Positions 12,176 to 62,842 of a stretch of DNA of 64,000 bases are shown piece by piece. Position numbers and translations under genes: made by a program. Below the pieces are notes generated by a model. The model ran no database searches and was not told the origin of the DNA. It worked only from the letters and a program-made list of their open reading frames with translations. Positions within the stretch are counted from its first letter, which is position 1. Each line of letters begins with the position of its first letter. Where the stretch lies: sequence record MK250017.1, one strand, 5' to 3'.

Positions 12176-14374
12176 ATGTCAAAAATAAAGAATTATCAAA
12201 AGTTAGATAAAAATTCTGTATTTAATAATTGTAGTTATGCATAGTCAGCAGGTGTTTATTATAATTAGGAAGGTTTTTCTAATGTAACAAATAAAATTTA
12301 GGATATGGGAACATATAATCCTGATAAGTATATATTAGGAAATATAACTAAACCAAATAAGAAGACATTTGTTAATTATGATAAACATGAAATAATTAAT
12401 AAAGGAAATAATACAAAAATTAACATTAATAATATAAAGAATAATAAGGAAACATATGCGTATGTTTCTGGTATTATGGTTCCTACTATTGAAGCAGAAG
12501 TAAAACCTATTACAGAAATATTAAAAGAAACTGAAAATAATATTACAAATTCAAAAAATATAGTTATTAATAGTAAAGAATTTAAAGAATTACATAAAGA
12601 AGAAAAAGTTATTAATAATAAAGACGTTAAACAAGTAAAAAGTAAATCATCTGTAAATTTATTTTCTAAAGTATTTGAAAATAAACAATAGAATGATATT
12701 AATGATATTAATGATGATAATGTAATATATTTAAATGGTTGGGTATGGTTAAATAGATTTAATAAACCATATGCACATAATTTTGGTGATGATATAAATT
12801 TTTCATTTTTGACAGAAATAACAGGTAAGAAACATAAGAAATACGATAATGAATTTGTAACAAATTATTTAATGATTGGAAGTATTTTTATTGATAAGTA
12901 TATAAATGATTTTACAGAAGTATGGGGTAGTGGAATGTTAAGACATTAGGTATTATATAAAAAACCAAATAAAGTATATGCAGTTAGAGGTCCAAAAACA
13001 CGAGAGATCTGTTTAGCATCAAATATAGATTGTCCGGAAATATATGGAGATCCTGCATTATTAATACCATATTACTATTATCCTTATGTAATGAAAAAAT
13101 ATAAATTAGGAATTATTCCACACCATTCTCATATTAATTCAGATATATTAAATAAATTTAAAGATAATAAAAATATTAAGATTATTAATTTTACAAAATA
13201 TAATGATTGGAAAGATATAATTAAAGAAATTGTAGAATGTGAATTTATTATATCTGAAAGTTTACATGGTTTGATTATATCAGAAGCATTTAGAATTCCT
13301 AATATATGGATTTCATTAGGAAATAATATAGGATAGAATTTGAAATATGAAGATTTCTTTTTATCTATTAATAAACCATTATATGATTCATATTTAGTAA
13401 ATGAAGATACAACATATGAAGATTTATTAAAATTAAAAGATAATTATAATTCAACATTTGAAATAGATTTACAAAAATTAGTTGATGCTTGTCCTATAAA
13501 ATTAAAGAATTTAAATTTATATAATCAGATTAAACCATATACAGGAAAAGTATTATTATGCTGTATAGGAAAAATGGAAAATAATTATATACGAGAGTTT
13601 GTAGAATATTATAAAACAATAGGATTTGATAATATATGTTTATATGATAATAATGATATAGATGGAGAACATTTTGAGGATGTAATAGGTGATTATATAG
13701 ATTCAGGATTTGTAATATTAAAAGATTGGAGAGGAAAAGAATTAGCATAGATTCCATCATATACAGATTGTTATAATACATATAAAGATGAATATGATTG
13801 GATTGCATATTTTGATATAGATGAATTTTTAGATTTAGCTTGTAATAATATAAAAGAATTCTTATCTGATGATATGTATAATGATAAAGGTATAAATTGT
13901 ATAAGAGTTTGCTGGAAACAATTTACTGATTCTAATATTATTAAAACAGATGGAAATTATTCAGTAACTAAATTTAATCAATATATACCATTAGATAAAG
14001 ATAAATATTGTGCATAGACAAAAATTATAATTAAAACGTAGTTAGATAATATCATATTTGATTCACCACATGGTGTTATATATAATAAAGATTGCCATAT
14101 TACATGTGTAAATACAAATGGTGATTTATGTACAAATGATATAATTATAAATAATCCTACATGGGAAAATGCATGTTTAAATCATTATCGTTTTAGAACA
14201 ATAGAGGAATATGTATTAAATAAAATGGTAAGATTATGGCCAACAACATATATGAATGGTGGAAAAACGGGATTAAATTTAAATTTATTTTTTAGATATA
14301 ATACATTTTCATAGGAAAAATTAGATTTTGCAAATTATCTTTTAGATAAATATAATATAAGTAGAAATGAATAA
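12176..14374 (+). CDS. polysaccharide pyruvyltransferase / glycosyltransferase fusion (732 aa, 10 TAGs)
   Basis: One frame through track ORFs 12305, 13091, 13340. Pyruvyltransferase motifs HNFGDD, IGS, VWGSG, AVRGPKTR, YGDPALL, LGIIPH, SESLHGLI; then GT motifs ENNYIREFVEYY, LYDNND, WIAYFDIDEF. Confidence 0.85.
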
Positions 14375-25641: not shown

Positions 25642-27564
25642 ATGAATATCTTAGACAATATTAATGAGAAAATAAATCCATGTGATGACTTTTATAATTA
25701 TGCTACAGGAAATTGGATAAAGAATAATCCACAGCCTGATGAATATCCAACATGGAATGTATTTACAAAGATAGAAGAAGATAATATCGATAGGATTAGA
25801 GATATTATTACATCATCAAAAACTGATTCATCTGTAATTAATCATAAGATTAATGATTGTTATAATATTATTATGAATTATGATAAGAGAAATAAAGATG
25901 GGAAGAAACCATTGATTTCTTATATCAATGAACATGTAAATAATCTTAAAACAAATATGGATGTAATTCTTGAATCTGCACGAAATAATATTGAAATGTT
26001 TTTTGATACAGGGTTACAACCAGATAGTAAAGGATCAGGTAAATATGAAGTTACTATATATCAGGATGGATTAGGTTTAGGAAATAAAGATTACTATTTG
26101 AAAGATACTGAAGAAAATCGAAAATATATGAATGCATATTCTCAATATATTATTGATTTATATGAATATCTGTATAATGATAATAATATTGCGTTAATGG
26201 AAAATAATAAGATATTATCAATAGAAAATTTATTGGCACCTGATTCATATTCAGTAGAAGAACTTCAAGATCCTATACTTAATTATAATAGAATATCTGT
26301 TAATGAATTATCAGAAAAAACATGTTTTGATTGGCGATTATATTTAGATACATTAGGTTATACAGAAACAAATGAAGTTATTGTAAGTAATATTGAATTT
26401 TTAAAGTGTGCATGTAAACTTCTCTTAACATTAGATACTTCTTATTTAAAGACTTTTTATGAATGGCAGGTAATTAATATTGCTGCAACAAAACTTGATG
26501 ATAAAATATATGACTTAGTGTTTAAGTATAGTCAGGTATTTACAGGTGCAAAAGTACAGTATCCGAAAGAAAAAAGAGCAATTAATAAGATTAATAGTGT
26601 TTTTTCCGAAGTCATCGGACAAATTTATGTTAAAAAGTATTTTAATAAAGATTCAAAGAATGATGTTATTAATATTATTGAAAATTTAAAGTCATCATTT
26701 GAAACTATTATAAATAGTCAAACATGGATGAGTAATGAAACAAAAGAAAAAGCATTAGATAAATTACATGCAATGAAACTTAAAATAGGGTATCCAGATA
26801 AATTTGAAGATTTTTCTGATATTCCTATTGATATTAATTTAACATATTTTGAAAATTCATTAAATATTCAGGAATATTTTAGAAAGAAAAATATGGAAAA
26901 ACATTATAATAAGGAAATTGATTATAATGAATGGTATATGGATCCTCAGACTATTAATGCTTATTATGATTGTATTCAAAATGAGATTTGTTTTCCTGCT
27001 GGTATTCTTCAATATCCATTTTATGATCCTAATAGAGATCCTGAATATAATTATGGAGCAATAGGTACAATTATAGCCCATGAAATGACACACGCTTTTG
27101 ATAATCATGGACGACATTATGATAAACATGGTATACTGAATGACTGGTGGACTGAAAGTGATTCTAATAAATTCAATGAATTAACAGATATAACAAAAGA
27201 ACGATTTAATAATCTTGAAGCTTTACCAGGATTAAAATGTGATGGTTCTTTAACTTTGGGTGAAAATATAGCAGATTATGGTGGATTGAAGATTGCATAT
27301 TATGCATGTAAAAATATTATGAAACATGGAATATGTACAACAAAAATTTGGGAACATAAATTCTTTTTAGCATATGCAAATAATTGGTCTGAAATTACAA
27401 CTGATGAAGCTATTAAGAATCTGGTCGCAAATAATGAACATACTATTAATCGATTACGTGTAAATGGAACACTACCTATGTTTACACCTTGGATAGATTA
27501 TTATAATGTAAAAAAGACAAATAAATTGTATTTGGATATAGACAAACGTGCAAAAATCTGGTAA
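25642..27564 (+). CDS. pepO: M13 family zinc metallopeptidase, PepO/neprilysin-like (640 aa)
   Basis: PCDDFYNYATGNW; INAYY; HEMTH zinc motif; GENIAD; no signal peptide. Confidence 0.93.
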   Translation: MNILDNINEKINPCDDFYNYATGNWIKNNPQPDEYPTWNVFTKIEEDNIDRIRDIITSSKTDSSVINHKINDCYNIIMNYDKRNKDGKKPLISYINEHVNNLKTNMDVILESARNNIEMFFDTGLQPDSKGSGKYEVTIYQDGLGLGNKDYYLKDTEENRKYMNAYSQYIIDLYEYLYNDNNIALMENNKILSIENLLAPDSYSVEELQDPILNYNRISVNELSEKTCFDWRLYLDTLGYTETNEVIVSNIEFLKCACKLLLTLDTSYLKTFYEWQVINIAATKLDDKIYDLVFKYSQVFTGAKVQYPKEKRAINKINSVFSEVIGQIYVKKYFNKDSKNDVINIIENLKSSFETIINSQTWMSNETKEKALDKLHAMKLKIGYPDKFEDFSDIPIDINLTYFENSLNIQEYFRKKNMEKHYNKEIDYNEWYMDPQTINAYYDCIQNEICFPAGILQYPFYDPNRDPEYNYGAIGTIIAHEMTHAFDNHGRHYDKHGILNDWWTESDSNKFNELTDITKERFNNLEALPGLKCDGSLTLGENIADYGGLKIAYYACKNIMKHGICTTKIWEHKFFLAYANNWSEITTDEAIKNLVANNEHTINRLRVNGTLPMFTPWIDYYNVKKTNKLYLDIDKRAKIW

Positions 27565-42433: not shown

Positions 42434-43555
42434 ATGGAAAATTCAAATGTAGCAATGTTTAATGATAAGGGTCAGGTAGAAACCCTTACTCAAAGTCAGT
42501 ATAACTATGATCAGCGAATTGCTGTTATGTCTGCTGATGAGAAAGCAAAGTATTTACAGAAGACGGAGAAGCTGGACCGTCATGATATGACTACAGTGAC
42601 TTCATATGGTAAAGAATTGAGTTCTGTTATTTCCCGTAATGGCGATAATCTTCTTAATTCTGTTCGTGGAGATAATTCGTCTGTGGTTGTACAGCTTACA
42701 AATGAACTTCTTAGTCAGCTTAATCTTATTGATATTGATGAGATTAATACTAATACTCGATGGAAGAAATTCTGGAGAAACTTCCCTATTATTGGGAAGA
42801 TGATGACTTCTGTTGAGTCTATTATGACTAAGTATGATACTATTAAAGATAGTGTTACAAAGATTGGTGAAAAGATTGATACTGCACGTACAGTTGCATT
42901 ACGTGATAATTCAACACTTAATCAGATTTTTGACGCTAATGTTTCATATATTGAGCAAATTCGTGAACTTATTCTTGCTGCAAAGATTCGTGAACAGGCA
43001 GTTAAGGATGAACTTGAAAATATGAAGGCTCATGCTAATGATTATGAGATGTATGAGATTAATGATACACAAAATTTCGTTAATCAAATTCAGAAGAAGA
43101 TTGTTGATATGGAAACAACTGAATATGTTTTGACACAGAATCTTCTTCAGATCCGTGCAACACAGCAGAATAATGTTGCAATCGCAGATAAGTCTGATAA
43201 TATTGTAAATAATGTTTTGCCATTGTGGAAGAATCAGATTTCTATCAGTATTATTATGAATAATCAGAAGAATTCTATTGAGGCACAGCAAAAGATTACT
43301 GATACAACTAATAAGATTTTGCGTGAGAATGCAAAGGCACTTCATATGAATTCTGTTAATGTTGCTAAGGCAAGTGAAGAGTCTGTTATTAAGCTTGATA
43401 CACTTAAGGACACTACACAGGAACTTATTCAGACAATTCAGGAAGTTAAGAATATTCATGATCGTGGAGCAGAAGAGCGTAAGGAATATGAATCTCATTT
43501 GCGTGAGTTTGCACGTCAACTTGAAATTTCATTAACAGATAACGATAATAAGTAA
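42434..43555 (+). CDS. telA: toxic anion resistance protein, TelA/KlaA family (373 aa)
   Basis: All-helical; YGKEL, IQKKIVDMETT, QIRATQQNN, VLPLWKNQI family-like motifs; TAG-free. Confidence 0.8.
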   Translation: MENSNVAMFNDKGQVETLTQSQYNYDQRIAVMSADEKAKYLQKTEKLDRHDMTTVTSYGKELSSVISRNGDNLLNSVRGDNSSVVVQLTNELLSQLNLIDIDEINTNTRWKKFWRNFPIIGKMMTSVESIMTKYDTIKDSVTKIGEKIDTARTVALRDNSTLNQIFDANVSYIEQIRELILAAKIREQAVKDELENMKAHANDYEMYEINDTQNFVNQIQKKIVDMETTEYVLTQNLLQIRATQQNNVAIADKSDNIVNNVLPLWKNQISISIIMNNQKNSIEAQQKITDTTNKILRENAKALHMNSVNVAKASEESVIKLDTLKDTTQELIQTIQEVKNIHDRGAEERKEYESHLREFARQLEISLTDNDNK

Positions 43556-45188: not shown

Positions 45189-47228
45189 ATGCAAAAAGGT
45201 AATATTGGAGTTACTAGTTAGGATATTTTTCCATTAATCAAGAAATTTATGTATAATGATCAGGATATTTTTATCCGTGAGATCGTAAGTAATGCAGTTG
45301 ACGCATCAGAGAAGTTAATTAAAGTTATTAGTGCAAATGAGTATACAGCAAATCCAGATGATTTAAAAGTTACAGTTACTATTAATCATGAAGATAATAC
45401 TATTACTGTTTCTGATATGGGTATTGGTATGACTGCTGATGAAATAGAAAAGTACATTAATCAGATTGCATTTTCAGGAGCAAATGACTTCTTAGAGAAA
45501 TATAAGGATACACAGATTATTGGTCATTTTGGACTTGGATTTTATTCAAGCTTTATGGTAAGTTCAAAAGTTGAAATTGTATCAAAGTCATATAAAGAGA
45601 ATTCAAAAGCATGTAGATGGACATGTGAAGGAACTACAGAGTTTACACTTAAGGATGATGATAAAGAATCTGTAGGTACCGATGTAATTATGCATATTTC
45701 TGATGAATATAAGGAGTATGTAAATGAAAGTAAACTTATGGAACTTTTAAAGAAGTACGCAGAATATTTACCTATTCAAATTTATCTTAAAGATGTTCCT
45801 GCACCAACTACTGATTCATCTACCGGTGAAGTTACATATCCAGAATCACATGAAACAAAAATTACACGAGATGAACCATTGTGGTTAAAATCTGCATCAG
45901 AACTTAAAGATGAAGATTATATTAAGTTCTATAAGGAAACATTCCCTAATAGACCTGAACCACTTTTCTGGATTCATATTAATATTGATACACCGTTTAC
46001 ATTTAAGGGAATTCTTTATTTCCCTGCATTTGATCAGAAACATCCTATTTTTGAGCGTAAGCATCTTAATTTGTATTGTAATCGTGTATTTGTGACAGAT
46101 GATGTAGATGGAGTATTACCAGATTATTTGAGTCTTCTTCATGGTGTAATTGACTCTCCTGATATTCCATTGAATGTTTCTCGTTCAGTTCTTCAAAATG
46201 ATGCTAATGTTAAGAAGATTAGTTCACATATTACAAATAAGGTTATGAGTTCACTTCGTACACTTATGAAGAAAGATAGAGAAACATATGAGAAAAAGTG
46301 GGAAACAATTAAAACCTTCATTAATCTAGGCGTTGTAACAGAACCTAATATTTTTGATAAAGCAAAGGATATTATTCTTCTTGTTGATACTGATAATAAG
46401 ATGTATACTTTTGATGAATATTATGATAAAGTATCAGAAACACAGAAAGATAAAGATGGTAAAATTGTATATTTGTATACATATGATACTGCTACACAAT
46501 ATACTTATATCGATGCTTTAAAGAAATACGGTTATAATATTCTGCTGTTTAATAGTCAATATGGAGCATTTGAAGTACATACATTTGAAATGAAATTACA
46601 AGAAAAGAATGTAACATTTAAACGTATTGATGCAGATGTACCAGAAAACCTTATTAAGAAAGAAGAAGATACAACAAAGAAAGAAAAACCTGTATCTGAG
46701 AATATCAAGAGTATGTTGGTATCTATGTTTGATTGTATTGAGCTAAATCTTCCTAAAATTACACATCAGTATATTGTTCAGCAAGATGGTAAAGATGCAC
46801 TGCCTATTACTATTGTTGCAGATGAGTTCTTCCGTCGTATGAAGGAAATGTCAATGCTTAATAATGCTGGTATGTATTTGGAAAATAATGCATCTATTAA
46901 GATTATTATTAATGCAGATTCTAAAGTTGTAAAGAAGATTATTAAGATTGCAGAAAAAGAAATTGGTCAGCAAATTAATGATATTAATGAAAAAGTTAAA
47001 GATATTAATACAAGATTGGAAGCTGCTGATACAGATGATGCAAAGAATTCTATTAAAAAAGAACTTGATAACATTATTGCAGAGAAAAAGGAAATTATTA
47101 ATAAACATGCACATGCAGATAGTCATATTCATGAATTAATTGATATTGGTTTGTTACAGTATGGTTTATTATCAGGTGAAGATTTGGCAGCATTTGTTAA
47201 GAGATCTATAAAGATGATTGAAAAGTAA
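45189..47228 (+). CDS. htpG: Hsp90 chaperone HtpG, Bacteroidota type (679 aa, single TAG at codon 11)
   Basis: MQKGNIGVTS-TAG-DIFPLIKKFMY...REIVSNAVDA; DMGIGM; GHFGLGFYS; IDSPDIPLNVSRS. Confidence 0.95.
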
Positions 47229-47639: not shown

Positions 47640-49672
47640 ATGAAGAAAATCGTATTGAATTTGATTGTCATACTAATGACATGTATGAGTTTTGTATCTT
47701 GTGCTTATGAGAGAGTTGATGCAGGATGTGAAGGTATTTATGTAAATCTTTATGGTGACGATAAAGGTGTAGGTGAAGTTAGTCTATGTACAGGGGCCGT
47801 GTGGTATTGTGTATAAATATTTCTAATAAATATATAAATAATCAAGAATAAAAATGAATTAGTAGATTTTAGATTTATTTGTAAACAAAGAATATACTGT
47901 ATAGAAAATATCAAAATATTTAAAAATAGATATAGAAATTGTTAGAAATACGTTATTGTTAAATTATTATCCTACTTTATATAGAACAAGAAAAGAAACA
48001 TTACGTATGCATGATGCAATGCTATGTTATATTAATAGTGATAGAAGTTTATTAAATATTGCTAAAGAATATAATATGGGTGATGATAATTTAGCAAAAA
48101 ATTTAAGATTATGTGGTGTAACTATTGAGGATCGTTAGCATAAACCAAAATTTAATGAAAATATATTTGATATTATTGATACAGAAGAAAAAGCGTACTG
48201 GTTAGGCTTTATATTTGCTGATGGTTATATTGAAACACCAAAACCAAATATGAAATATACATTTGAAATATGTTTATCATGTAAAGATAAACATCATTTA
48301 GAAAAATTTAATATTTTTATGTAGCATAAAAATATGAATATAAAAGTTTATACACATTTGGATAAAATAGCAAATAAAGAACGTACAAATGCTAGATGGA
48401 TTGTTGCAAATAAACATTTGTGGAATACATTAAATAATTTAGGATGTACACCTCAAAAATCATTAACATTAAAATTTCCTAATATAAAAGAAGAATTAAA
48501 ACGTCATTTTATAAGAGGATATATAGATGGTGATGGCACAATAGGATATTATGGAAAATATAATACTGTTCATTGTGAATGTATAGGAACATATGATATT
48601 TTATATAATATGTTTACATCATTAAATTTTATACCTAGAATATTTAATAAACCAAAGCGTTATAAAAAAGAAACAATGTTTTTTACAATGTCTGGTTCCA
48701 AAGCGAAAGAATTTATTAATTATATTTATAAAGATTGTAATATATATTTAGACCGAAAATATTAGAAATATATAGAAATATGCCGTCTATAATAGGAATA
48801 TTATAGATTATTAATGACCAATATCGGGGAAGTGCTGAGATGCGAATCCCGAGATAAGTTATAATTTTAAAAGATTTTAACCATCGTACAGCGTAGAAAT
48901 TGAACCTATATTATAATATAGAATAAAATATTTCCAAGAGTGGTCATCATCCCAACTGAAATAAGTGGATGAATAGGTACGCGGAACTACCCAAATATGA
49001 AGGGATAGAAATACGAATAAAAAGTCGTATGATAACAAAATTGATTGCCCCTTGACTCATGATGTATTTGAATATCCTACATATATTCAGACTGTAGATT
49101 ATCCATCATTTGAAGTTAATAGTAAAGACGGTACAAAATTTACTGTTGATCCTGCAGTTCTCGTAAAAATAGAAGATGGTAAATCACCACTTATTTTTAA
49201 AAAGTATAGAAAGCAGCTTGATGAAATTGTAAAGAATACTTTATATGTTTATATCAGAGATGCAGCACGTATTGAATTTAATAAGTATACAGCAGACCAG
49301 ATTGTATCAAATCGTGAAGCAGTAGATAAATCATTTGAGGAACGTGTAAGAAAAGGATTTGCAAGTGAACATTTTATTCTTCAGCAATTAACGCCAGGTA
49401 TTGGTTATCCTAAATCATATGAAGAAGCTATTAATGCTAAGAATAAAGCAATTCAAGATGAAATGCGTGTCAGCAATGAGATTCGTGTAGCTGAGGCAGA
49501 AGCAAAGAAAAAACTTGTTCTTGCAGAAGCAGAAGCGAAGGCAAACAAATTGAAAGAACAATCACTTACACCATTGCTTATTCAGAAAATGGCAATTGAA
49601 AAGTGGTCAGGAAATTTGCCAGATACATATGTAGGTAGTCATGGTATTCCTAATTTGATTTTAGGAAAGTAA
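47640..49672 (+). CDS. SPFH/Band 7/prohibitin family lipoprotein, join(47640..47805,49044..49672), 264 aa
   Basis: Exon 1 lipobox FVSC then ERVDAGCEGIYVNLYG; spliced junction GAVWYCPLTHDVFEYP; exon 2 AARIEFNKYT, GIGYP, EAEAKKK, AIEKWSG; 795 nt keeps frame. Confidence 0.85.
47806..49043 (+). mobile_element. group I intron (1238 nt) with LAGLIDADG ORF
   Basis: Exon ends in U, intron ends in G; P3 ATGACCA 48814 / TGGTCAT 48941; P4 TCGGG / CCCGA; P7 CAGCGTA 48889 / TACGCG 48978 with bulged A; P8 CATCC/GGATG; GNRA-capped P2. Confidence 0.88.
47854..48792 (+). CDS. intron-encoded double-motif LAGLIDADG endonuclease (312 aa, 6 TAGs)
   Basis: AYWLGFIFADGYI and HFIRGYIDGDGTI; exact TATAAATA at 47833-47840 upstream. 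Confidence 0.88.
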
Positions 49673-52361: not shown

Positions 52362-55300
52362 ATGAAGGTAACAAAACGTGATGGTAGTTTTGAGAATTAT
52401 AGTGTTTAGACAGTTAAACGTGCAGTTAGAGAAGCGTTTAAGTCAACAAAGACTAAATACTCAAAAGACACAATTTCGAATATTGTAAGTTCTATTACGC
52501 CATATGATGGCATTCCTGTAGAAGAAATACAGGATCAGATAGAAACAAGTTTGTATTCTCATGATCAGCCTAAAGTTGCAAAAGAATTTATTCTTTATCG
52601 CAATAAGAAGAAGGAAATCAGAGAATGGGTTGCTAATAAAGAAGCATTTATTGAAAGATATAAAAATGCATCAAATACTGCAAATAGTACAATTGATGAT
52701 AATTCTAACGTATCATCTAAGAACATCGGTGTATTAAATGCAGAAATTCATAAAGGTGATAATATTCTTGTAAGTAGAGGAATGATTACAAGAAAGTTAA
52801 AAGATTTATTCCCTGATTTTAAAGCAAAACAATATCAAAAAGATTTAAAAAATCATATTATCTATAAGAATGATGAATCAAGTTTTGCTGGTGCTATAAG
52901 TCCTTATTGTGTTAGTGTATCTATGTATCCATTTCTTAATCATGGATTGGAAAAGATTGGAGGTTTATCATGCCATCCACAAAATCTTGATTCCTATTGT
53001 GGTATGTATGTAAATCTTGTATTTGCAGTTGCAGCACAATTTGCAGGAGCAGTAGCAACATCAGAATTCTTGGTATATTTTGATTATTTTGCACGAAAGG
53101 AATTTGGAGATGATTACTATTTGCATAGTAAAGAATTCTATAAGATTGGTCCAAAATATCGTAAGTTACTTAATGAATCTAATTACTGGTGTAAAGATGT
53201 AGATACACTTAGAAAACATGATTTTGGTACAGATGAATTAAATAAATTGAGAGATGAACTTGTTTATAATTCAGAACGACCATTATCTGATGAAGAACTT
53301 AAAGAATATGAAACAGAACTTTCTAAATATGATGTAGAAGGTTCAATAAAAGATTTTACAAATCCTATTAAGATTGGTGATGGTACAAGAACTATTGGTT
53401 CATGTATACAACAATTCTTCCAACAAGTAGTGTATTCAATTAACCAACCCGCGGCAAGTCGTGGTCTGCAATCTGCATTTGTAAATTTCTCTTATTTTGA
53501 TAAGCCTTTCTTTGAAGGTATGTTTGGGGAATTTGTATTTCCAGATGAAGAAGGTACAAGACCTTGTTGGGAAAGTGTTTCATGGTTGCAGAAAGATTTT
53601 ATGATTTGGTTTAATAAAGAGCGCCTTCGTACTATAATCACTTTCCCTGTTGAAAGTTTTGCATTGGTATATAAGGATGGAAAGTTTGTAGATGAAGATT
53701 CTGCAGATTTTGTTGCAGAAGAATATTCTCGTGGTCATTCATTCTTTACTTATATGTCAGATACTGTTGATTCATTATCAAGCTGCTGTTTCGATGGTGA
53801 TACACCATTTATGTTTGTAGAACCTCTTAATATGGAAGAGCATGGTGGTAATAATGCATATATGGTTTCAACTATTAAAGATGCATATGAAAAATATAAA
53901 GATGATATAATTAATGTATATCATATGAATTTTAATGGTACTACAGGTAAATGTACAGGTGAATGGGTAAATGCAAAATTTGTAAAAGCACAAGCTATTC
54001 AGGAAGTACGAATTTATTTTAAACCAGATGATTTCAATCCAGATGAGTCAAGGAATGTAATGAGAGTTACGCCGGATCATATATTCCCTGTTATTGATGA
54101 TAATGGATTTATTACAGATAAAAATGCATATTTGTTACAGACTGGAGATCAACTTATTTTTGAATATGCACAATATATGGGATTATTTAGAGATGAATTC
54201 CCTGATAGAGATCAAGATTTAGTAAAACGTGCTATTTCAAAAGTTGAAATTGTAAATCTTGATGAACCAAAGGATTATTATTGTGTAGAGTTATGTGATA
54301 AAAATATTGAACCATACTTTTTGTTACCTAATGGAAATATTACACATAACTGTCGCCTTAAGAATAAGATTCAAACAAAGGAATTTAATTTTACAAATGG
54401 TAACTTAGGGATCAACTTGGGTCCTTTATGTGCTTAATTGCTAATCAAGCAATGTATTAATATAGCGATATTAATGCATCGGTGAAGCCTAAACATAAGT
54501 TGTGAAACTATATGCATGGTAATACCGAACCAAGTTAATAAATATGTTATAATTTTACATTTATAATATATGAATAATAAAATATTTACAATTTACAAAA
54601 TATCATTTCCAAATGGAAAAGTATATATTGGTTAGACATATCATTATCATTAGAGAATTAAAGAACATTTAAATGAAATGAAACATAGTGATTATAAATT
54701 ATATAGAGCTATGAGGAAATATAATATAAATGAAAATAATTTTTCTATAGTAGAAGAAAATATTTTAACATAGAACGATGCAGATAATAAAGAAATATAT
54801 TATATCAATTTATATGATAGTTATAATAATGGATATAATTCTACATTAGGTGGACATGCTGCAACAATAACAAAAATAGGAGAAGAACATCCTAAAGCTA
54901 TATTAAATGATAATGAATTATTAGAATTAAGAAAAATTAGATATTCTATGAAATATACATTTGGAGAAGTATATGATATGTATAAAAATAAAATGTCAAA
55001 AAGTGGTTTTTCAAAATATTGGCATTATTATACAAGACCTGAAATCGGAGAAGAATATAATACTGATGAAGTAAATAAATTTTATAAATCTGATAGGAGA
55101 ACAAGAAGAGGTATATTACATGCAAATTCAAGAAATTTATCAGATGAAGAAGTTTTAAATATAAGAATACGATATTTTGTAAATGGTGAAAAAGAAGATG
55201 ATATTTTTAAAAAATATAAACACTTATATTCAAAGAGTGGTTTTAATAAAATATTATTTGGATAGTCATATATGCATGTAAAAATGCCTATTAAAACAGA

Positions 55301-56546
55301 TAAGTGTAAATAGAAATTACCATAGTTATCAAAAGAAGAAGTAATTTCATTAAGAGAACAATATAATAATGGTAAGTCTATTAATGAATTAAAAGTTGGA
55401 AAATATGAAAAATATTCAATGAATAATTTTAGAAATATGTTAATAGGTAGAACATATAAAAATTATTAATGTGTGTGGAGGTCATCCCCTAAGTGATGAG
55501 CAGGAGGAGTAGGGCTACTATTGATACGTAGCAGTATTTTAGGAAACGAAGTACTTTAAATGCCGAAATAGTGCAATGTTTATTAACATAATAAACATAA
55601 GATATGACCCGGACCATATAGAAATATATGGAGAAAACGTCAAACAGGTTCAAAATCTGTAATAACATTAAATCTTAGTCGTATAACACAAGATTGGTTT
55701 AATAGTGTTAAGAAAACAGGTGTAACAAAAGAAAATGTAGAAGAACATTATGATGAATTGTGTCATTATTTTGGTGACATTCTTGATAGAGTATACAAAT
55801 ATCATACTGCATATAATGAACTTCTATGGGATATGTATGATGCTGGTTTGCTTCCGGTATATAAAGCTGGATTTATTAGTTTGAATAAGCAATATTTAAC
55901 AATTGGATTAAATGGTCTTAATCAAATGGCAGAATTTTTAGGAATTACATGCAATATAAATCCTCATTATGAAAAATTATGTCAAACAATATTTGGATAT
56001 ATTAAGCAGAAGAATCAAGAAGCTGCAGGTATGTTTAACGGACACAAGCTCACGTTTAATACCGAGTGCGTACCAGCGGAAAGTCTTGCAATAAAAAATT
56101 ATAATTGGGATAAAGAAGATGGATATTGGGTAAGTGATGATACAAATCTTTATGCATCTTATATTTTTAAACCAAATGACAAGAGCTTATCAATTTTCGA
56201 TAAAATTACATTACATGGTCGTGATTATATCGGAGATTTCTTAGATGGTGGTTCTGCGGCTCATCTTAATTTATCAGAGCATTTATCTAAGAAACAAATA
56301 AAACATATCATGCAATTTGCAGCACAGGTAGGATGTCAGTATTGGACATTTAATGTACCTAATTGTAAGTGTGAAGATTGCGGATATATATCAAAAACTC
56401 CATTTGATAAGTGTCCAAAATGTGGATCAGTTCATATAAGTTTATATGACCGTATCATTGGATATTTAACTAAAATTTCGAACTGGTCAGATGGACGTCA
56501 ACAAGAACAAAAGACACGTGTTTATCTACATAGTGAAAATATTTAA
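52362..56546 (+). CDS. nrdD: class III anaerobic ribonucleotide reductase, join(52362..54412,55640..56546); 985-aa precursor, 797 aa after intein removal
   Basis: ATP cone MKVTKRDG (TAG at codon 16); SLSSC|intein|CRL; spliced NGNLGIQTGSKSVITLNLSR; VPAESL; CxxC..CPKC; glycyl-radical RIIGY. Confidence 0.93.
53787..54350 (+). mobile_element. cis mini-intein in NrdD (188 aa, no endonuclease)
   Basis: Block A CFDGDT; block B VTPDHIF; block F YYCVEL...YFLLPNG; terminal THN then Cys+1. Confidence 0.92.
54413..55639 (+). mobile_element. group I intron (1227 nt) with GIY-YIG ORF in nrdD
   Basis: GGGAT|...AAAACG|TCAAAC; P1 guide GGGTCCTT; P4 TCGGT 54479 / ACCGA; P7 GAGGTCAT 55478 / ATGACCC 55604; S-like AAGATATGACC; P9 CCATATA-GAAA-TATATGG. 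Confidence 0.92.
54570..55469 (+). CDS. intron-encoded GIY-YIG endonuclease (299 aa, 6 TAGs)
   Basis: TIYKISFPNGKVYIG-TAG-T, RIKEH, LYRAMRKY, EIYYI, NGYNSTLGG; HTH-like C-terminal repeats. Confidence 0.9.
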
Positions 56547-56677: not shown

Positions 56678-57739
56678 ATGAATTATAATAAAATTTATAA
56701 TAATATTATTAATAATGCAAAAAATCGAAATAATATAAACAATCAATACTTTGAAATACATCATATTATCCCTAAATGTATAGGAGGAACTGATGATGAT
56801 AAAAATTTAGTAAAACTTACATTACGTGAACATTTTATATGTCATGAATTATTAGTTAAAATATATCCAGATATACAATCATTAAAATGCGCATTATGGA
56901 TTATTTGTATTACGACATTAGAAGCAAAAAAAGAATATATAACAAATAATATAAAATATAAAAATAATAAATTACCTATTAATCATAGAGTACAACATTT
57001 TTTAAATGATTTTGAAAAACATATTAATATATCTTCAAGAGATTATGAATATTGTAGAACATTATATTATATAGCAACAAAAGGGAAAAAACGAACTGTT
57101 GAGCAATGTAAAAAAATTTCAGATGCGACAAAGCATGCTATGAAAGATCCATCTAGAGTACAATTAAGAAGAAAAGGTGTATTGGGTAGTAAATTTTATT
57201 ATGATTTAATAACAAATAAATCTTATAAATGGTTTCCGGGAGATCCAGATATTGATTTAAATAAGTATGCGTGGGGTAGAGGAAAGAAAATGAGTTTAAA
57301 ATCAAAAACATTAATGTCTGAAAATTTATCAAAATATAAAAAAGTATATTATTATAATGATAATTTAAAATCATCTACATGCTTTTGTAAAGATTAGATA
57401 AAAATATTACCTGATAGTTGGCATTTAGGAAGAAAATTCGGCGGATATAATAAAATGAAAATATTTATTATACCATTATTAAGAAATGTACATTTTAAAT
57501 TAGTATGTAATTAGCATTTTATTGATAATATATTTTATCATATTAATTTATTAAACAAATAGGAAATAAGTATAGGTATATTAACGATTAATGAAAAAAT
57601 ATTAAGTGACTTAATACAAAAAAATATTGATATTAATGATGAAAAATATATTACAATAATATATAACAATATATTAAATAATATAAACCAAATTAAAACT
57701 ATTAATAATAGCGTTTATTTAAATAGTGAAAATATTTAA
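56678..57739 (+). CDS. free-standing HNH homing endonuclease, T4 Mob-like (353 aa, 3 TAGs)
   Basis: EIHHIIPKCIGGTDDDKNLVKLTLREHFICH; ATAAATA 56650 upstream; ends VYLNSENI-TAA inside repeat copy 2. Confidence 0.85.
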
Positions 57740-59800: not shown

Positions 59801-62800
59801 TTATTTGTCATTATTACTATTTGTATCTAATGTATTTTCATCTATATCATTATTATTCGAAAATTCTACTTGCTAATTTGTATTTTTAGTCATGTAATTT
59901 GTAAATGTTATTAATGTGCCTGGTATTCTATCTGAACCTAATATCGCTTTTACAGATTCCCAGAATTCTCTTTGTTTTATTGTATCTGTTCCTATATGAT
60001 AATGTTTTGTTGTTGCACCTGTATCATCTCGTGCCTATTCTATATAAGCAGATACACCATAATCATAGAATAATTTTAATATAGTAGGACTTTTCATTAT
60101 AATATTTGTCATAAGTTCAGTAAAATCCATACCGTTATTAATAATATCTATAGCTTCGCCATATAAATGTCGTGAATTATTCTTTTTAAAATACATTACT
60201 TCACCAATAGCATTCATACATTTATAATAATCATATTTTTTTATAAATGCATTACCATCAACTTTATTACCATATTCATCTACTGCCCATCTTCTTCCAG
60301 ATACTAATTTACATTTATTATCAGATTCAGATAAAATAGTTTTATAAATATCCTTCATAAAAGATTTTAAACCAGTTAATGGTATAGTAGAACCAGCTAC
60401 ATAATCAGATTTCTTTACATATTGATCTATCATATCCATATTAAAATTAACTGCCTCTACTGTTTCTTTTCCGTGTGCATTATATATAGTACCGGCTTCT
60501 TCTTGTTCTTGCTATTGTTCATCAGTTGTAGAACTTATATTCTATTTTCTCTATGCAGTCACGACTGCATCTTCAGATGTTTTTGCACCTTTAATATGTT
60601 CTGCTCCATATCGTTTTAATGCATCATAATATGCCATTCTAGCAAGTTTACCATTTCCAATATCTACTAATACAATAGTATTTGCTGTTTTTTTATCTAT
60701 TGTTTTACCTGATTTATCTTTAATTTTAGATGGTACTGGCCATTCTCTTCTAACTAATTTAACATTTGTTCTCCAATTTGTACCCTAACCCTAATCATTA
60801 TCAGTATCGAATACCCATTCAATACCATCTATAATATACCAACCAGATTCTGCTTCATACATGCATTCTTCTATTTTTGTACGTGCTTGACCAGTTCTAA
60901 TAGCTTGTTCTGCTCTATTTAAATCCATTAAAACAATAGGCATTTTTTCACCACGAACAATACTTAAGTTTGCACCATTTAATTCAACAAGTAAATACTG
61001 TTTTTGTAACTATAATAAATTTCTCATATTATGTTCATATGCAACTTCATAAAATCTATGAGTATTTCCAGATGACATCATATTATTTCCGGTTCCTTCA
61101 AGATTTGCTGCATCTCCATCAGATTGTTGATTTGTAATTTTCTCTGGTTCATTTTTATTTGATGATTGAGTTTCTGAAGTAGCCATTGCAGAATCACCAC
61201 TTGCATATGTCATATTTCTTCCAGGTCCTAATAATACGAAGAAATCATTATCTGCTCGTGTTGGATCAAATTTTGTTCTATTTAAACATAATGAAAATTC
61301 AACACTATAATTAGGATTATTTGGATCTATTAAACCTGTGTTAACTGATGAATATTGCATTTTACAATTTAATCCCACAAAATCCTATATTTCCTATGCA
61401 TTATTAAGTAATCTCCAATTATTAACATGATATACTGTTGCTGCTTCATTATCATCTGTAATATTAGTAAATATCTTTGTCTATATATGCGGTTTTACTT
61501 TCTATTCTTCATCTGTTTTAGTTGCTGCTTTACCATCAATAGCTCTATTATTAATAAATGTATTTGTCCAGAATGTCATATCTATTGATTCATCATAACC
61601 ACTTTCACCTAATAATCTATTAATATTCATGAAAGATAATCCATATCTCGGATCTATCCATGATTCAAAAAATGAATTAGAATCTTTCCATGCATGTGTT
61701 GTCAAATCATGTAAAAACATTTCTGGTGATTTACAATTACACCAAACCATTACATCGTTTGTATCATCTGGATCACAAAAGAAGAAACTTAATCTTAAAC
61801 GTTTTGCAAGATCCATCATAGCATCTCGTGATGAACCATTAAAATTATATCTAGATTCTTCATTTCTTAAATCTGGTACATATAATTCTCCGGTTATAAT
61901 CTATGTCTAATATTTCTGATATTGCGTCTAATCCATCTAATCAGAAACAACATTTGTAATTCTGAAATCACATCTCATAGACTTAATCATTGCATGTCCA
62001 CTCTGAAAAAATACACTGCATCTATCACCTTGCTTTACAAAATCCTTTTTTAATAAACCAGGGTCTGATGTAGTTACTATAAGTCTCATCGTAGGTAAAA
62101 CACCTGTTAATGGCATTTGATAAATTTCATACTCATTATAATTCTTATAATAACCGGTTTCCATAGAAAAATGCTATATTTCTGTAGATTCAAAATAATG
62201 ATCATTTATACGAATTATAGGATATACGGCACCTTTATTATACCATTGATTCTCTTTAATATTAGGACTTGTTACATCTGGTACTGAAATACCAATTACA
62301 TCAGGATTATTAATATCAGCGCCTAATGGTAATGAACTACGAGGATTATCTTTATCTTTATTTCCCATTGAATCCTCAAATATACCTTTATTTGAAGAAT
62401 CTTTAGAACCTTTACCATTGTCATCAGAATCATTTGCATTATCTCCAGTATTTGATGTATTCTTATTTGTTCCTGAAGAATCATTCTCTGACTCATCATT
62501 TGTATTAGAATTATCATCATTACTTCCATCAGAATTAGATGTATCTTTATTAGATGTATCAACCATATCTAATATTTTATCTTCATCTGATTTTGAATAA
62601 CAAACACCACCATATTTTCCTGAACCATAATCAATAGTATAATTAAAAAAATCTTTCTTTATTATCTAATTTGTTGTTACATCTTTATATACTTTTGTTT
62701 CTGTATATAATTTTGCATTCTTACCTTTAAATATGATATTATAAGTATTATTTATTGTGTCAGTATAATAATAATGTGTTATAGTTTTATCTGATGATAC

Positions 62801-62842
62801 TTCTCCTTTTTTTAAATATTTAATACCATTTATCGTTAACAT
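59801..62842 (-). CDS. baseplate hub-like protein with C-terminal M15-type zinc peptidase (1013 aa, 18 TAGs)
   Basis: Five track ORFs (62174, 61937, 61502, 61010, 60035) share one frame from ATG 62842 to TAA 59801; GWYIIDGIEWVF...WRTNVKLVRR; SRHLYGEAID (H-x6-D) and HYH. Confidence 0.7.

What the first reader, a model, noticed from the sequence alone, without database searches (positions are those of the whole stretch)
47640..49672. Group I intron in an SPFH/prohibitin lipoprotein gene, an unusual target
Seen: the only U|...G| junction (47805|47806 and 49043|49044) that restores the frame gives GAVWYCPLTHDVFEYP. The core is complete, with an intact G-binding P7 (CAGCGUA/UACGCG). The 312-aa LAGLIDADG ORF lies 5' of P2/P3 and its last codons overlap a candidate guide (GCCGU pairing exon GUGGU), placing it in the P1 loop. 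Known: phage group I introns mostly sit in DNA metabolism, terminase, structural or lysin genes, and usually carry HNH or GIY-YIG. Inference: the SPFH gene is conserved enough among co-infecting phages to sustain homing, and splicing needs a ~950-nt loop closure.
Basis: partly seen in the sequence, partly recalled or inferred. Interest (0 to 1): 0.85.

Follow-up and report, generated by a model that had tools for sequence, protein, structure and literature searches.

The report
Mobile group I intron in Lak megaphage
A 1,238-base self-splicing-type (group I) intron carrying its own homing-endonuclease gene interrupts a membrane-scaffold (SPFH) lipoprotein gene of the gut megaphage Lak-A1; it is real and recently acquired, but it is an ordinary kind of element in an unusual gene.

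Summary
The window is Prevotella phage Lak-A1. Bases 47806-49043 are missing from the same gene in Lak-A2, Lak-C1 and Lak-B2. Removing them gives a 795-nt gene whose protein is identical to that of A2 and C1.

The 3' 268 nt fold as a group I core of IA type: P2-P9.1 with P7.1/P7.2, a bulged P7 with an invariant G-C pair, and a terminal G. Covariation in more than 30 relatives from other phages supports this fold. Rfam's group I model misses the whole family.

The guide GCCGU (48782-48786) pairs with exon GUGGU. It has six in-frame TAGs, two of them at codons 3 and 4. The host gene has none.

A1 and A2 differ in the gene at only five sites. All are synonymous and lie within -11 to +8 of the junction, which looks like a co-conversion scar from homing.

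Relatives of the intron sit in helicase, terminase, polymerase, RNR, tape-measure and capsid genes. All 46 other SPFH homologues checked lack it.

Splicing itself was not shown.

The parts
47640..47805 (+). Exon 1 of the SPFH/Band-7 lipoprotein gene: 55 codons plus the first base of a Tyr codon. It carries a signal peptide with a lipobox-like ...SFVSC.
   Evidence: The ORF is listed. It matches phrog_200 'lipoprotein' at profile positions 80-124. It is continuous with exon 2 in Lak-A2, C1 and B2. The lipobox was read by eye and not run through a predictor.
47806..49043 (+). Group I intron, 1,238 nt, phase 1 (inserted between T and AT of a Tyr codon).
   Evidence: It is absent from the Lak-A2, C1 and B2 alleles, and 2033-795 = 1238. 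A joint that skips 1,238 bases is seen in public DNA and RNA contigs. It is the only copy of this family and of this endonuclease in Lak-A1, and neither occurs in A2, C1 or B2.
47806..47853 (+). The intron's 5' leader. The exon-1 reading frame stops at TAA 47814-47816, three codons into the intron.
   Evidence: ORF 47640..47816.
47854..48792 (+). Double-motif LAGLIDADG homing-endonuclease ORF, 312 codons plus TAA. It has six in-frame TAGs, at codons 3, 4, 17, 95, 157 and 304. It fills the P1 loop and runs through the guide into P2.
   Evidence: It is open under TAG=Q. Pfam LAGLIDADG_3 scores 1.5e-9 and phrog_4645 'endonuclease' 8e-51 over residues 12-311. Six of its seven presumptive Gln codons are TAG. 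Relatives have Q most often at codon 95 and E or Q at codon 304.
48782..48786 (+). Internal guide sequence GCCGU. It pairs with exon G47801-U47805 to form P1, with U47805 against G48782 as the wobble pair at the cut. A47806-U48781 and U47807-A48780 extend P1.
   Evidence: Read from the sequence. The same alignment column is the guide in relatives with a compact P1, and it co-varies with their exons: GGCGU/AUGCU in L006 and L031, GCCUC/GAGGU in L078, GUCG/UGAU in L064.
48787..48806 (+). P2 hairpin: 8 bp with a GGAA tetraloop. The endonuclease stop codon lies in its 5' strand.
   Evidence: RNAalifold predicts it with compensatory changes. The minimum-energy fold recovers it.
48814..48852 (+). 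P3 5' strand (48814-48819), J3/4, P4 (48824-48829 with 48847-48852) and the short P5 (48833-48835 with 48842-48844).
   Evidence: P3 pairs in 26-28 of 30-31 relatives, with 3-5 pair types per position. P4 pairs in 24-30 of 31, with GC/UA exchange.
48858..48881 (+). P6 hairpin.
   Evidence: About 29-30 of 31 relatives pair at six of its eight positions, with 4-6 pair types each; the two loop-proximal positions pair in 20 and 7. RNAalifold also predicts it.
48889..48895 (+). P7 5' strand, with bulged A48890. G48891 forms the invariant G-C pair next to the bulge, the expected guanosine-binding site.
   Evidence: 31/31 pair at all six positions. G48891-C48982 is GC in 31/31. The closing pair occurs as AU 19, GC 8 and CG 4.
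48896..48934 (+). P7.1 (48896-48900 with 48930-48934) enclosing the optional hairpin P7.2 (48906-48921). This is the extension typical of subgroup IA.
   Evidence: P7.1 pairs in 31/31, with up to five pair types per position. The inner hairpin is present in some relatives and absent in others.
48942..48983 (+). P3 3' strand (48942-48947), P8 (48948-48971), J8/7 (48972-48977) and the P7 3' strand (48978-48983).
48987..49043 (+). P9 (48987-49008), P9.1 (49011-49030), the conserved GAUAACAAA tail, and the terminal G49043.
   Evidence: RNAalifold predicts both hairpins with compensatory changes. GATAAC is invariant in nine sequences. The terminal G aligns with the 3' ends of relatives whose downstream exons continue host ORFs.
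49044..49672 (+). Exon 2 of the SPFH/Band-7 gene.
   Evidence: Pfam Band_7 scores 1.2e-18. It matches phrog_200 positions 135-354. It is 100% identical to the protein in Lak-A2 and C1.

Best explanation
This is a mobile group I intron of IA type (P7.1/P7.2 present). It recently entered the SPFH/Band-7 lipoprotein gene of Prevotella megaphage Lak-A1.

Splicing (inferred from the anatomy). The gene is transcribed through the intron. The ribosome that translates exon 1 stops three codons into the intron. The RNA forms P1 by long-range pairing of exon GUGGU (47801-47805) with the guide GCCGU (48782-48786), which closes a 976-nt loop. The core (P2-P9.1, 48787-49030) binds a free guanosine at the bulged P7. 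That guanosine attacks after U47805. The freed exon then attacks after G49043. The ligated mRNA encodes a 264-aa lipoprotein identical to the one Lak-A2 makes from an uninterrupted gene.

Endonuclease and homing (inferred). The loop encodes a double-motif LAGLIDADG homing endonuclease. Six of its seven presumptive glutamine codons are TAG, including codons 3 and 4. It can therefore be made only when the phage's TAG-reading machinery is active, probably late in infection. The standard-coded host gene has no such limit. In mixed infections the enzyme would cut intron-less alleles. Repair from the intron-bearing copy would then carry the intron and a few flanking bases across.

What is shown and what is not. 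Shown: the exact insertion, the conserved and co-varying fold, the guide position, the recoded ORF, the presence/absence polymorphism, and the flank signature. Inferred: catalysis, the timing of endonuclease synthesis, and cleavage of the empty site.
For: Identity and boundaries. The window is 100% Lak-A1. The A2, C1 and B2 alleles lack exactly 1,238 nt, and the A2 and C1 proteins equal the spliced product.

Fold. Nine-sequence RNAalifold recovers P2, P6, P7, P7.1, P8, P9 and P9.1, and 27 of 45 pairs show compensatory changes. Thirty-one full-length relatives from IMG/VR support P3, P4, P6, P7, P7.1 and P8 at about 85-100% pairing at most positions (lower at the loop-proximal ends of P6 and P8), with several pair types each. 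The P7 G-C pair is invariant. The minimum free energy of the core is -56.5 kcal/mol, z = -3.56, and 0 of 200 shuffles fold as well.

Guide. It co-varies with the exon in relatives that have a compact P1.

Family. More than 100 nhmmer hits at E from 1e-65 to 1e-5 interrupt recognisable phage genes. Among them, cr118_1 splits a DnaB-like helicase and cr6_1 carries an annotated 'intron-encoded endonuclease'.

Endonuclease. Pfam and PHROG hits. TAG makes up 6 of 7 Gln codons against 0 of 8 in the host gene.

Recent mobility. There is one copy in A1 and none in A2, C1 or B2. Across about 4.5 kb of shared sequence around the gene, A1 and A2 differ at seven sites. Five of these are synonymous and cluster at 47795, 47798, 47801, 49048 and 49051. 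One pig-gut DNA run holds both intron-bearing and intron-less contigs.

Precedent for a recoded intron endonuclease acting as a timer: Borges et al. preprint 10.1101/2021.08.26.457843.
Against: Rfam RF00028 gives no hit, even at E up to 10, on the intron or on eight related loci. Membership therefore rests on my own structural model and on homology, not on a curated model.

P1 is weak: 5 bp, three of them G-U, plus 2 A-U pairs. It must close a 976-nt, 22-24% GC loop.

There is no direct evidence of splicing. The joined contigs in the RNA runs carry A2-like flank letters, and the joined form also exists as DNA. They are best read as transcripts or DNA of intron-less alleles.

The insertion is recent, so intact exons and an intact ORF say little about selection for function.

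The amino acid at TAG is taken from the literature. Alignment gives only loose support.
Confidence: 0.85

Rival explanations
1. The intron does not splice on its own. It depends on its LAGLIDADG protein acting as a maturase, or on a host factor, to close the long P1 loop and stabilise an AT-rich core. In that case the SPFH protein would also depend on TAG read-through and would appear only late.
For: P1 is short and rich in G-U pairs, and the loop is 976 nt. The intron is 24% GC. Yutin et al. label crAss LAGLIDADG ORFs 'intron-encoded endonuclease maturase' (PMC7886860). Maturase activity of LAGLIDADG proteins is established for mitochondrial introns (general knowledge).
Against: Relatives without an ORF (cr118_1, L048, phiCD211) keep the same core with no protein gene of their own. 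This argues that the ribozyme is self-sufficient. The core fold is well above the shuffled background.
Confidence: 0.12
2. The insertion is a dead or disabling element. The SPFH gene of Lak-A1 is simply broken, and the phage tolerates the loss of an accessory gene.
For: No splicing data exist. The insertion is very recent, so decay would not yet be visible. SPFH is an accessory gene, not a core phage gene. Rfam does not recognise the RNA.
Against: Every helix and every family-invariant position of the core is intact. The guide matches this particular exon. The exon-1 frame stops just inside the intron, and the phase restores the frame exactly. The same intron-bearing allele appears to persist at an estimated 98-99% identity in pig-gut and manure DNA runs from several studies, so it spreads or is at least maintained.
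Confidence: 0.05
3. The five flank substitutions are not a co-conversion scar. They were selected after insertion, either to protect the allele from its own endonuclease or to improve P1/P10 pairing.
For: All five lie within about 20 bp, the size of a LAGLIDADG recognition site, and all change A or T to G or C.
Against: None of them improves pairing with the guide. G47801 gives G-U where A2's A would give A-U, and 49048 and 49051 face no complementary bases (read). An intron-bearing allele is already uncuttable. The pig-gut intron-bearing contigs carry the A2-type letters at 47798 and 49048, so these positions are free to vary. Other intron-less Lak lineages already carry two of the five variants, GTG and CCC, as expected for variation brought in from a donor.
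Confidence: 0.1

Closest known systems
Group I introns of crAss-like phages: cr118_1 in a DnaB-like helicase gene, and cr6_1 in an AAA ATPase gene with an annotated intron-encoded endonuclease (background in Yutin et al. 2021, PMC7886860).
   Same: They belong to the same RNA family: 68-73% nucleotide identity over the whole core, the same helices, and the same GCCGU guide embedded in the endonuclease's last codons (...C-R-L-stop). The endonuclease is of the same PHROG and also sits in the P1 loop. Their hosts are also Bacteroidota.
   Different: The host phage is an unrelated ~540-kb megaphage. The interrupted gene is an SPFH lipoprotein, not a P-loop NTPase cut between the G and K codons of Walker A. 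The Lak endonuclease is heavily TAG-coded, whereas the cr6_1 ORF has no in-frame stops.
Phage T4 td, nrdB and nrdD introns, and the Bacillus and Staphylococcus phage introns (subgroup IA2).
   Same: They have the same overall mechanism and life style. They share IA-type architecture with P7.1/P7.2, a homing-endonuclease ORF looped out of the core, homing with co-conversion of the flanks, and delayed endonuclease expression (general knowledge of these systems).
   Different: Those introns carry GIY-YIG or HNH enzymes in nucleotide-metabolism or DNA-polymerase genes, with the ORF in other peripheral loops (from memory, not tested here). [quoted passage not shown] Membership of IA2 specifically was not tested with subgroup models.
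The recoded group I intron endonuclease of Agate phages (Borges et al., preprint 10.1101/2021.08.26.457843).
   Same: It is an intron in a gene that does not itself need recoding. Its endonuclease ORF is full of the reassigned stop codon, which the authors propose holds back endonuclease synthesis until late.
   Different: There the codon is TGA read as W. Here it is TAG, read as Q according to the Lak papers. The phage clade and the host gene also differ.
Rfam RF00028 Intron_gpI.
   Same: Both share the general group I layout. The P7 and J8/7 consensus can be lined up by eye: GACUA/UAGUC in the model against GCGUA/UACGC here.
   Different: The model does not score this intron or its family at E up to 10. 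It does score other introns in the same loci (L011, L006).

Membership tests
Group I intron | Excision at the proposed borders restores the host reading frame exactly. | tested here: met
   The intron-less Lak-A2 and C1 alleles are 795 nt, and their protein is identical to the joined exons.
Group I intron | The 5' exon ends in U, which forms a wobble pair with G of an internal guide (P1). | tested here: met
   U47805 pairs with G48782, and GUGGU pairs with GCCGU. The guide column co-varies with the exons across the family.
Group I intron | The intron's last base is G. | tested here: met
   It is G49043. This is the only one of the five equivalent cut positions that has U before the 5' cut and G before the 3' cut. 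It aligns with the 3' ends of relatives.
Group I intron | A conserved core of P3-P4-P5-P6 and P7-P3'-P8, with a bulged P7 holding an invariant G-C pair (the guanosine site). | tested here: met
   Covariation in 9 and in 31 sequences. G48891-C48982 is GC in 31/31, next to the bulged A48890.
Group I intron | A match to the curated covariance model (Rfam RF00028). | tested here: not met
   There is no hit at the gathering score or at E up to 10. The whole family is missed. I take this as a gap in the model for IA-type phage introns, not as evidence against membership.
Group I intron | Guanosine-dependent self-splicing. | not testable with these tools
   RNA contigs with the joint exist but cannot be told apart from intron-less alleles.
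Subgroup IA | Extra helices P7.1/P7.2 between P7 and P3'. | tested here: met
   P7.1 pairs in 31/31 with up to five pair types. The inner hairpin is optional. Subgroup-specific models were not available.
LAGLIDADG homing endonuclease | Two LAGLIDADG motifs in one chain and a match to the family profile. | tested here: met
   Pfam LAGLIDADG_3 scores 1.5e-9 over residues 112-197. phrog_4645 scores 8e-51 nearly end to end. The second motif (...YIDGDGT...) was seen by eye. No solved structure was found by sequence.
LAGLIDADG homing endonuclease | An uninterrupted reading frame. | tested here: inconclusive
   The frame is open only under TAG = sense. That reading is justified by the rest of the window and by PMC6784885, but it is not shown for this ORF.
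LAGLIDADG homing endonuclease | Cleaves the intron-less allele. | not testable with these tools
   It needs an enzyme assay on the A2-type site.
Mobile (homing) intron | Presence/absence polymorphism at one site among close relatives, with altered flanks. | tested here: met
   A1 has it, and A2, C1, B1-B9 and six IMG/VR Lak contigs do not. Both forms occur in one pig-gut run. Five clustered synonymous changes lie at the site.
SPFH / Band 7 (host gene) | A match to the family profile across the join. | tested here: met
   Band_7 scores 1.2e-18 on exon 2. Exons 1 and 2 match phrog_200 positions 80-124 and 135-354 in order, and the unmatched 10 residues fill the 10 missing profile positions.

The most novel reading that the evidence does not exclude
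Two linked ideas that the data allow but do not show.

(1) TAG recoding works as a switch that separates splicing from endonuclease synthesis. Early in infection, ribosomes drop off at codons 3-4 of the endonuclease ORF. The guide and P2, which are part of that ORF, then stay free to fold, and the standard-coded SPFH mRNA is spliced. Late in infection, read-through produces the endonuclease and may at the same time block splicing.

(2) The intron reached Lak by an ectopic jump across phage families. Its closest relatives sit after GGT in the Walker A motif of crAss-like phage NTPase genes, and their guide GCCGU is fixed by the endonuclease's last codons. The SPFH site offers the same UGGU just before the cut, so the guide-ORF overlap may dictate which new genes this family can colonise.
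Probability: 0.3. Interest if true: 0.6.

Novelty: new member of a known kind. Interest (0 to 1): 0.45.

Why it matters
Published work on Lak megaphages reports only tRNA introns and 'large intergenic regions' (PMC6784885 and PMC8346664). This locus shows that protein-coding genes of Lak phages also carry mobile group I introns, so some apparent gene fragments and intergenic gaps are really introns and gene calls need correcting.

It links the intron pools of crAss-like phages and megaphages that share Bacteroidota hosts.

It offers a clean natural experiment. Lak-A1 and Lak-A2 come from different people in one cohort. In this gene they differ only by the intron and a 19-bp flank tract.

It is a second, independent case of a stop-codon-recoded homing endonuclease inside a standard-coded gene. 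That bears on the idea that recoding times late functions.

It also shows that the curated Rfam model misses a large phage intron family: more than 100 copies turned up in one capped scan.

Tried and rejected
Rfam, over the whole window at gathering score and over the locus at E up to 10, found no group I hit. It also found none in eight related loci, apart from unrelated neighbouring introns.

The 'Intron_gpI' feature annotated in phiCD211 looked like independent support. It turned out to be a second, different intron about 24 nt downstream of the family member, so I did not use it.

Reads. The joint that skips 1,238 bases appears in three RNA runs. Those contigs carry A2-type letters at 47798, the same joint is present in a DNA run, and all the runs are contigs rather than raw reads. 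I therefore rejected this as evidence of splicing.

No whole genome is held for the window. I searched the GenBank records through loci instead.

A sequence search of the PDB with the endonuclease found nothing useful.

I looked for a donor SPFH allele carrying the intron. All 46 IMG/VR homologues are uninterrupted.

I tested whether the five flank changes strengthen P1 or P10. They do not.

I did not build an Infernal model. I used nhmmer and my own pair counts instead. In those counts the P9 and P9.1 columns are out of register for Lak because of indels, so for those two helices I rely.
Full report
**What the window is.** The 2,033-nt stretch is 100% identical to four Prevotella phage Lak-A1 genomes (MK250015-18). 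Lak phages are ~540-kb megaphages published as using code 15, TAG read as Gln (PMC6784885). The window shows this directly. Reading TAG as sense fuses many fragments into long ORFs, for example 12176-14374 (732 aa, 10 TAG) and 59801-62842 (1,013 aa, 18 TAG). Other genes have no TAG at all.

**The observation.** Exon 1 (47640-47805) runs into a TAA three codons past the proposed 5' cut. Joining 47805 to 49044 gives a 795-nt ORF.
- The two halves match the same PHROG ('lipoprotein', phrog_200) in order, at profile positions 80-124 and 135-354. The unmatched residues at the join exactly fill the 10 missing profile positions.
- Exon 2 is a Band_7/SPFH domain (1.2e-18).
- Decisively, Lak-A2, Lak-C1 and Lak-B2 carry the gene uninterrupted at exactly 795 nt. 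The A2 and C1 proteins are identical to the spliced Lak-A1 product.
- ATTG is repeated at both borders, so five cut positions are equivalent at the DNA level.

**The RNA.** Rfam's group I model finds nothing, even at E up to 10. However, the last ~290 nt of the insertion are 66-73% identical to sequences in several other phages: crAss-like phages cr118_1 and cr6_1, Clostridium phages phiCD211 and CB452P1, Staphylococcus phages of the 6ec group, and unclassified gut phage contigs.
- In the annotated records these sequences lie between two halves of one gene: a DNA helicase in cr118_1, an ATPase in cr6_1 together with an 'intron-encoded endonuclease', and tape-measure genes in phiCD211 and 6ec.
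- A profile HMM built from nine sequences hit nearly all of them, at E from 1e-65 to 1e-5. It hit the window once only, at 48780-49043.

**The fold.** I derived a structure by hand on the Lak sequence:
- guide 48782-48786
- P2 48787-48806, with a GGAA loop
- P3 48814-19 with 48942-47
- P4 48824-29 with 48847-52
- P5 48833-35 with 48842-44
- P6 48858-81
- P7 48889 and 48891-95 with 48978-83, with bulged A48890
- P7.1 48896-900 with 48930-34, enclosing hairpin P7.2 48906-21
- P8 48948-71
- P9 48987-49008
- P9.1 49011-30
- terminal G at 49043

RNAalifold on the nine-sequence MAFFT alignment independently predicted P2, P6, P7, P7.1, P8, P9 and P9.1, and 27 of 45 pairs showed compensatory double changes. 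In 31 distinct full-length relatives:
- P7 and P7.1 pair in 31/31.
- The G-C pair beside the P7 bulge is invariant.
- The P7 closing pair occurs as AU, GC or CG.
- P3, P4, P6 and P8 pair in about 85-100% of sequences at most positions (less at the loop-proximal ends of P6 and P8), with three to six pair types at many positions.

The Lak core folds 3.6 standard deviations better than shuffles. The P7.1/P7.2 insertion marks it as an IA-type intron. That probably explains why RF00028 misses the whole family while it scores unrelated neighbouring introns.

**Guide and ORF position.** In relatives with a compact P1, the pentamer just 5' of P2 pairs with the last exon bases and co-varies with them: GGCGU with AUGCU (phiCD211, L031), GCCUC with GAGGU (L078), GUCG with UGAU (L064), and GCCG with UGGU (cr118_1, L048). 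In Lak the same column reads GCCGU and pairs with exon GUGGU, with U47805 against G48782 at the cut. Everything between 47806 and 48781 (976 nt) is therefore the P1 loop.
- That loop holds the ORF 47854-48792. The ORF continues through the guide (codons TGC-CGT) and stops in the 5' strand of P2.
- cr118_1 keeps a remnant of the same ORF's 3' end in its ~85-nt P1 loop, so the architecture is ancestral to this sub-family.

**The endonuclease.** Under table 11 the ORF is broken. With TAG as sense it is 312 codons.
- It matches Pfam LAGLIDADG_3 and, nearly end to end, phrog_4645 'endonuclease' (8e-51). It shows two LAGLIDADG-type motifs.
- Six of its seven presumptive Gln codons are TAG, including codons 3 and 4. 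The SPFH gene uses CAA or CAG eight times and TAG never.
- Relatives most often have Q at codon 95 and E or Q at codon 304. Several relatives in other phages also carry in-frame stops.
- The enzyme is single-copy in Lak-A1 and absent from A2, C1 and B2. The same is true of the intron core pattern.
- Borges et al. described the same arrangement in Agate phages: a group I intron endonuclease rich in the reassigned stop, inside an early gene. They proposed that it delays endonuclease synthesis. I adopt that reading here as an inference.

**Mobility.** Around the gene, A1 and A2 share about 4.5 kb with only seven differences. Five of these are synonymous A/T-to-G/C changes at 47795, 47798, 47801, 49048 and 49051, that is within -11 to +8 of the junction.
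- They do not improve P1 or P10.
- Two of the five variants occur in other intron-less Lak lineages.
- Pig-gut intron-bearing contigs carry the A2-type letter at two of the sites.
- The simplest reading is a short co-conversion tract from a different Lak donor during a recent homing event.
- Public runs from animal guts and manure, 12 studies in all, hold the stretch.
- One pig-gut DNA run contains contigs that cross both intron borders and also a contig with the 1,238-nt skip. Both alleles therefore coexist, which is the condition homing needs.

**Target.** Ten sampled family members interrupt DnaB-like helicase, AAA ATPase, tape-measure, two terminases, two Pol III alpha segments, RNR, a ClpX-like ATPase and the crAss major capsid protein. 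None of 46 SPFH homologues in IMG/VR has any interruption or any hit to the intron profile; six of these are Lak-like and about twenty crAss-like at ~53% identity. The SPFH gene really is an unusual home for this family.

**What is not shown.** There is no direct evidence of splicing. The joined RNA contigs look like intron-less alleles, and the joint also exists in DNA. Endonuclease activity, the identity of the residue at TAG in this ORF, and the timing model are all inferences.

**Comparison and novelty.** Group I introns with LAGLIDADG, HNH or GIY-YIG genes are known to be dense in crAss-like and Jug phages (PMC7886860 and PMC12880540). For Lak phages, the literature held here reports only tRNA introns. 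This is therefore a new member of a known kind. It is well supported, sits in an atypical gene, and has an instructive recoding contrast between the intron ORF and the host gene.

Noticed in passing
window 52362-56543: The anaerobic ribonucleotide reductase gene nrdD is split. Its N-terminal part (52362-54434) matches NRDD profile positions 31-240 and its C-terminal part (55758-56543) matches positions 305-560. A 299-codon GIY-YIG ORF with six in-frame TAGs (54570-55466) lies between them. This is probably a second endonuclease-bearing intron in the window, in a classical target. I did not fold it or map its borders.
   Followed up: partly
window 53433|53434; L184:12563-13934 (Lak-A2): Lak-A2 has a 1,372-bp insertion inside the nrdD N-terminal exon that Lak-A1 lacks. 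Its 5' flank ends in T and the insert ends in G. It encodes a ~345-codon ORF with an HNH-like CxxC...HH motif and does not match the intron family studied here. A1 and A2 therefore each carry an intron that the other lacks.
   Followed up: partly
window 56678-57736: A 353-codon ORF with three TAGs gives a weak HNH hit (E 6e-4, below the Pfam cut-off), just downstream of nrdD. It may be another homing-endonuclease gene.
   Followed up: no
window 45249-47228: The phage encodes a full-length HtpG/Hsp90-type chaperone of 659 aa (Pfam HSP90 2.8e-44 plus HATPase_c). It has no TAG codons and lies directly upstream of the SPFH gene.
   Followed up: no
whole window: TAG recoding is patchy from gene to gene. 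Some genes have no TAG among 14-25 Gln codons (HtpG, 42434-43552, 25642-27561). In others TAG makes up about half or more (12176-14371, 59804-62842 and both endonuclease ORFs). No tRNA gene lies in the window.
   Followed up: partly
L006:2478-3058 (Clostridium phage phiCD211): Two different group I introns sit in tandem in the tape-measure region, separated by an exon of only about 24 nt. The first belongs to the family studied here. The second is the one Rfam recognises, at 41.7 bits.
   Followed up: partly
L004:2975-3312, L005:2785-3868, L048 and relatives: Family members with the guide GCCGU sit between the Gly (GGT) and Lys (AAA/AAG) codons of the Walker A motif of P-loop NTPases. The guide is also the Cys-Arg codons at the end of the endonuclease ORF (...C-R-L-stop). 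This overlap between guide and ORF may limit which exon sequences the sub-family can invade.
   Followed up: partly
window 47640-49672 against crAss-like phages (cr85_1, PhiCrAssBcn1-3, IAS virus): The SPFH lipoprotein is shared at 53-55% protein identity between Lak megaphages and several crAss-like phages. Its annotations there are inconsistent: 'serine protease', 'HflC', 'prohibitin family', 'hypothetical'. This suggests gene exchange among phages of Bacteroidota.
   Followed up: no
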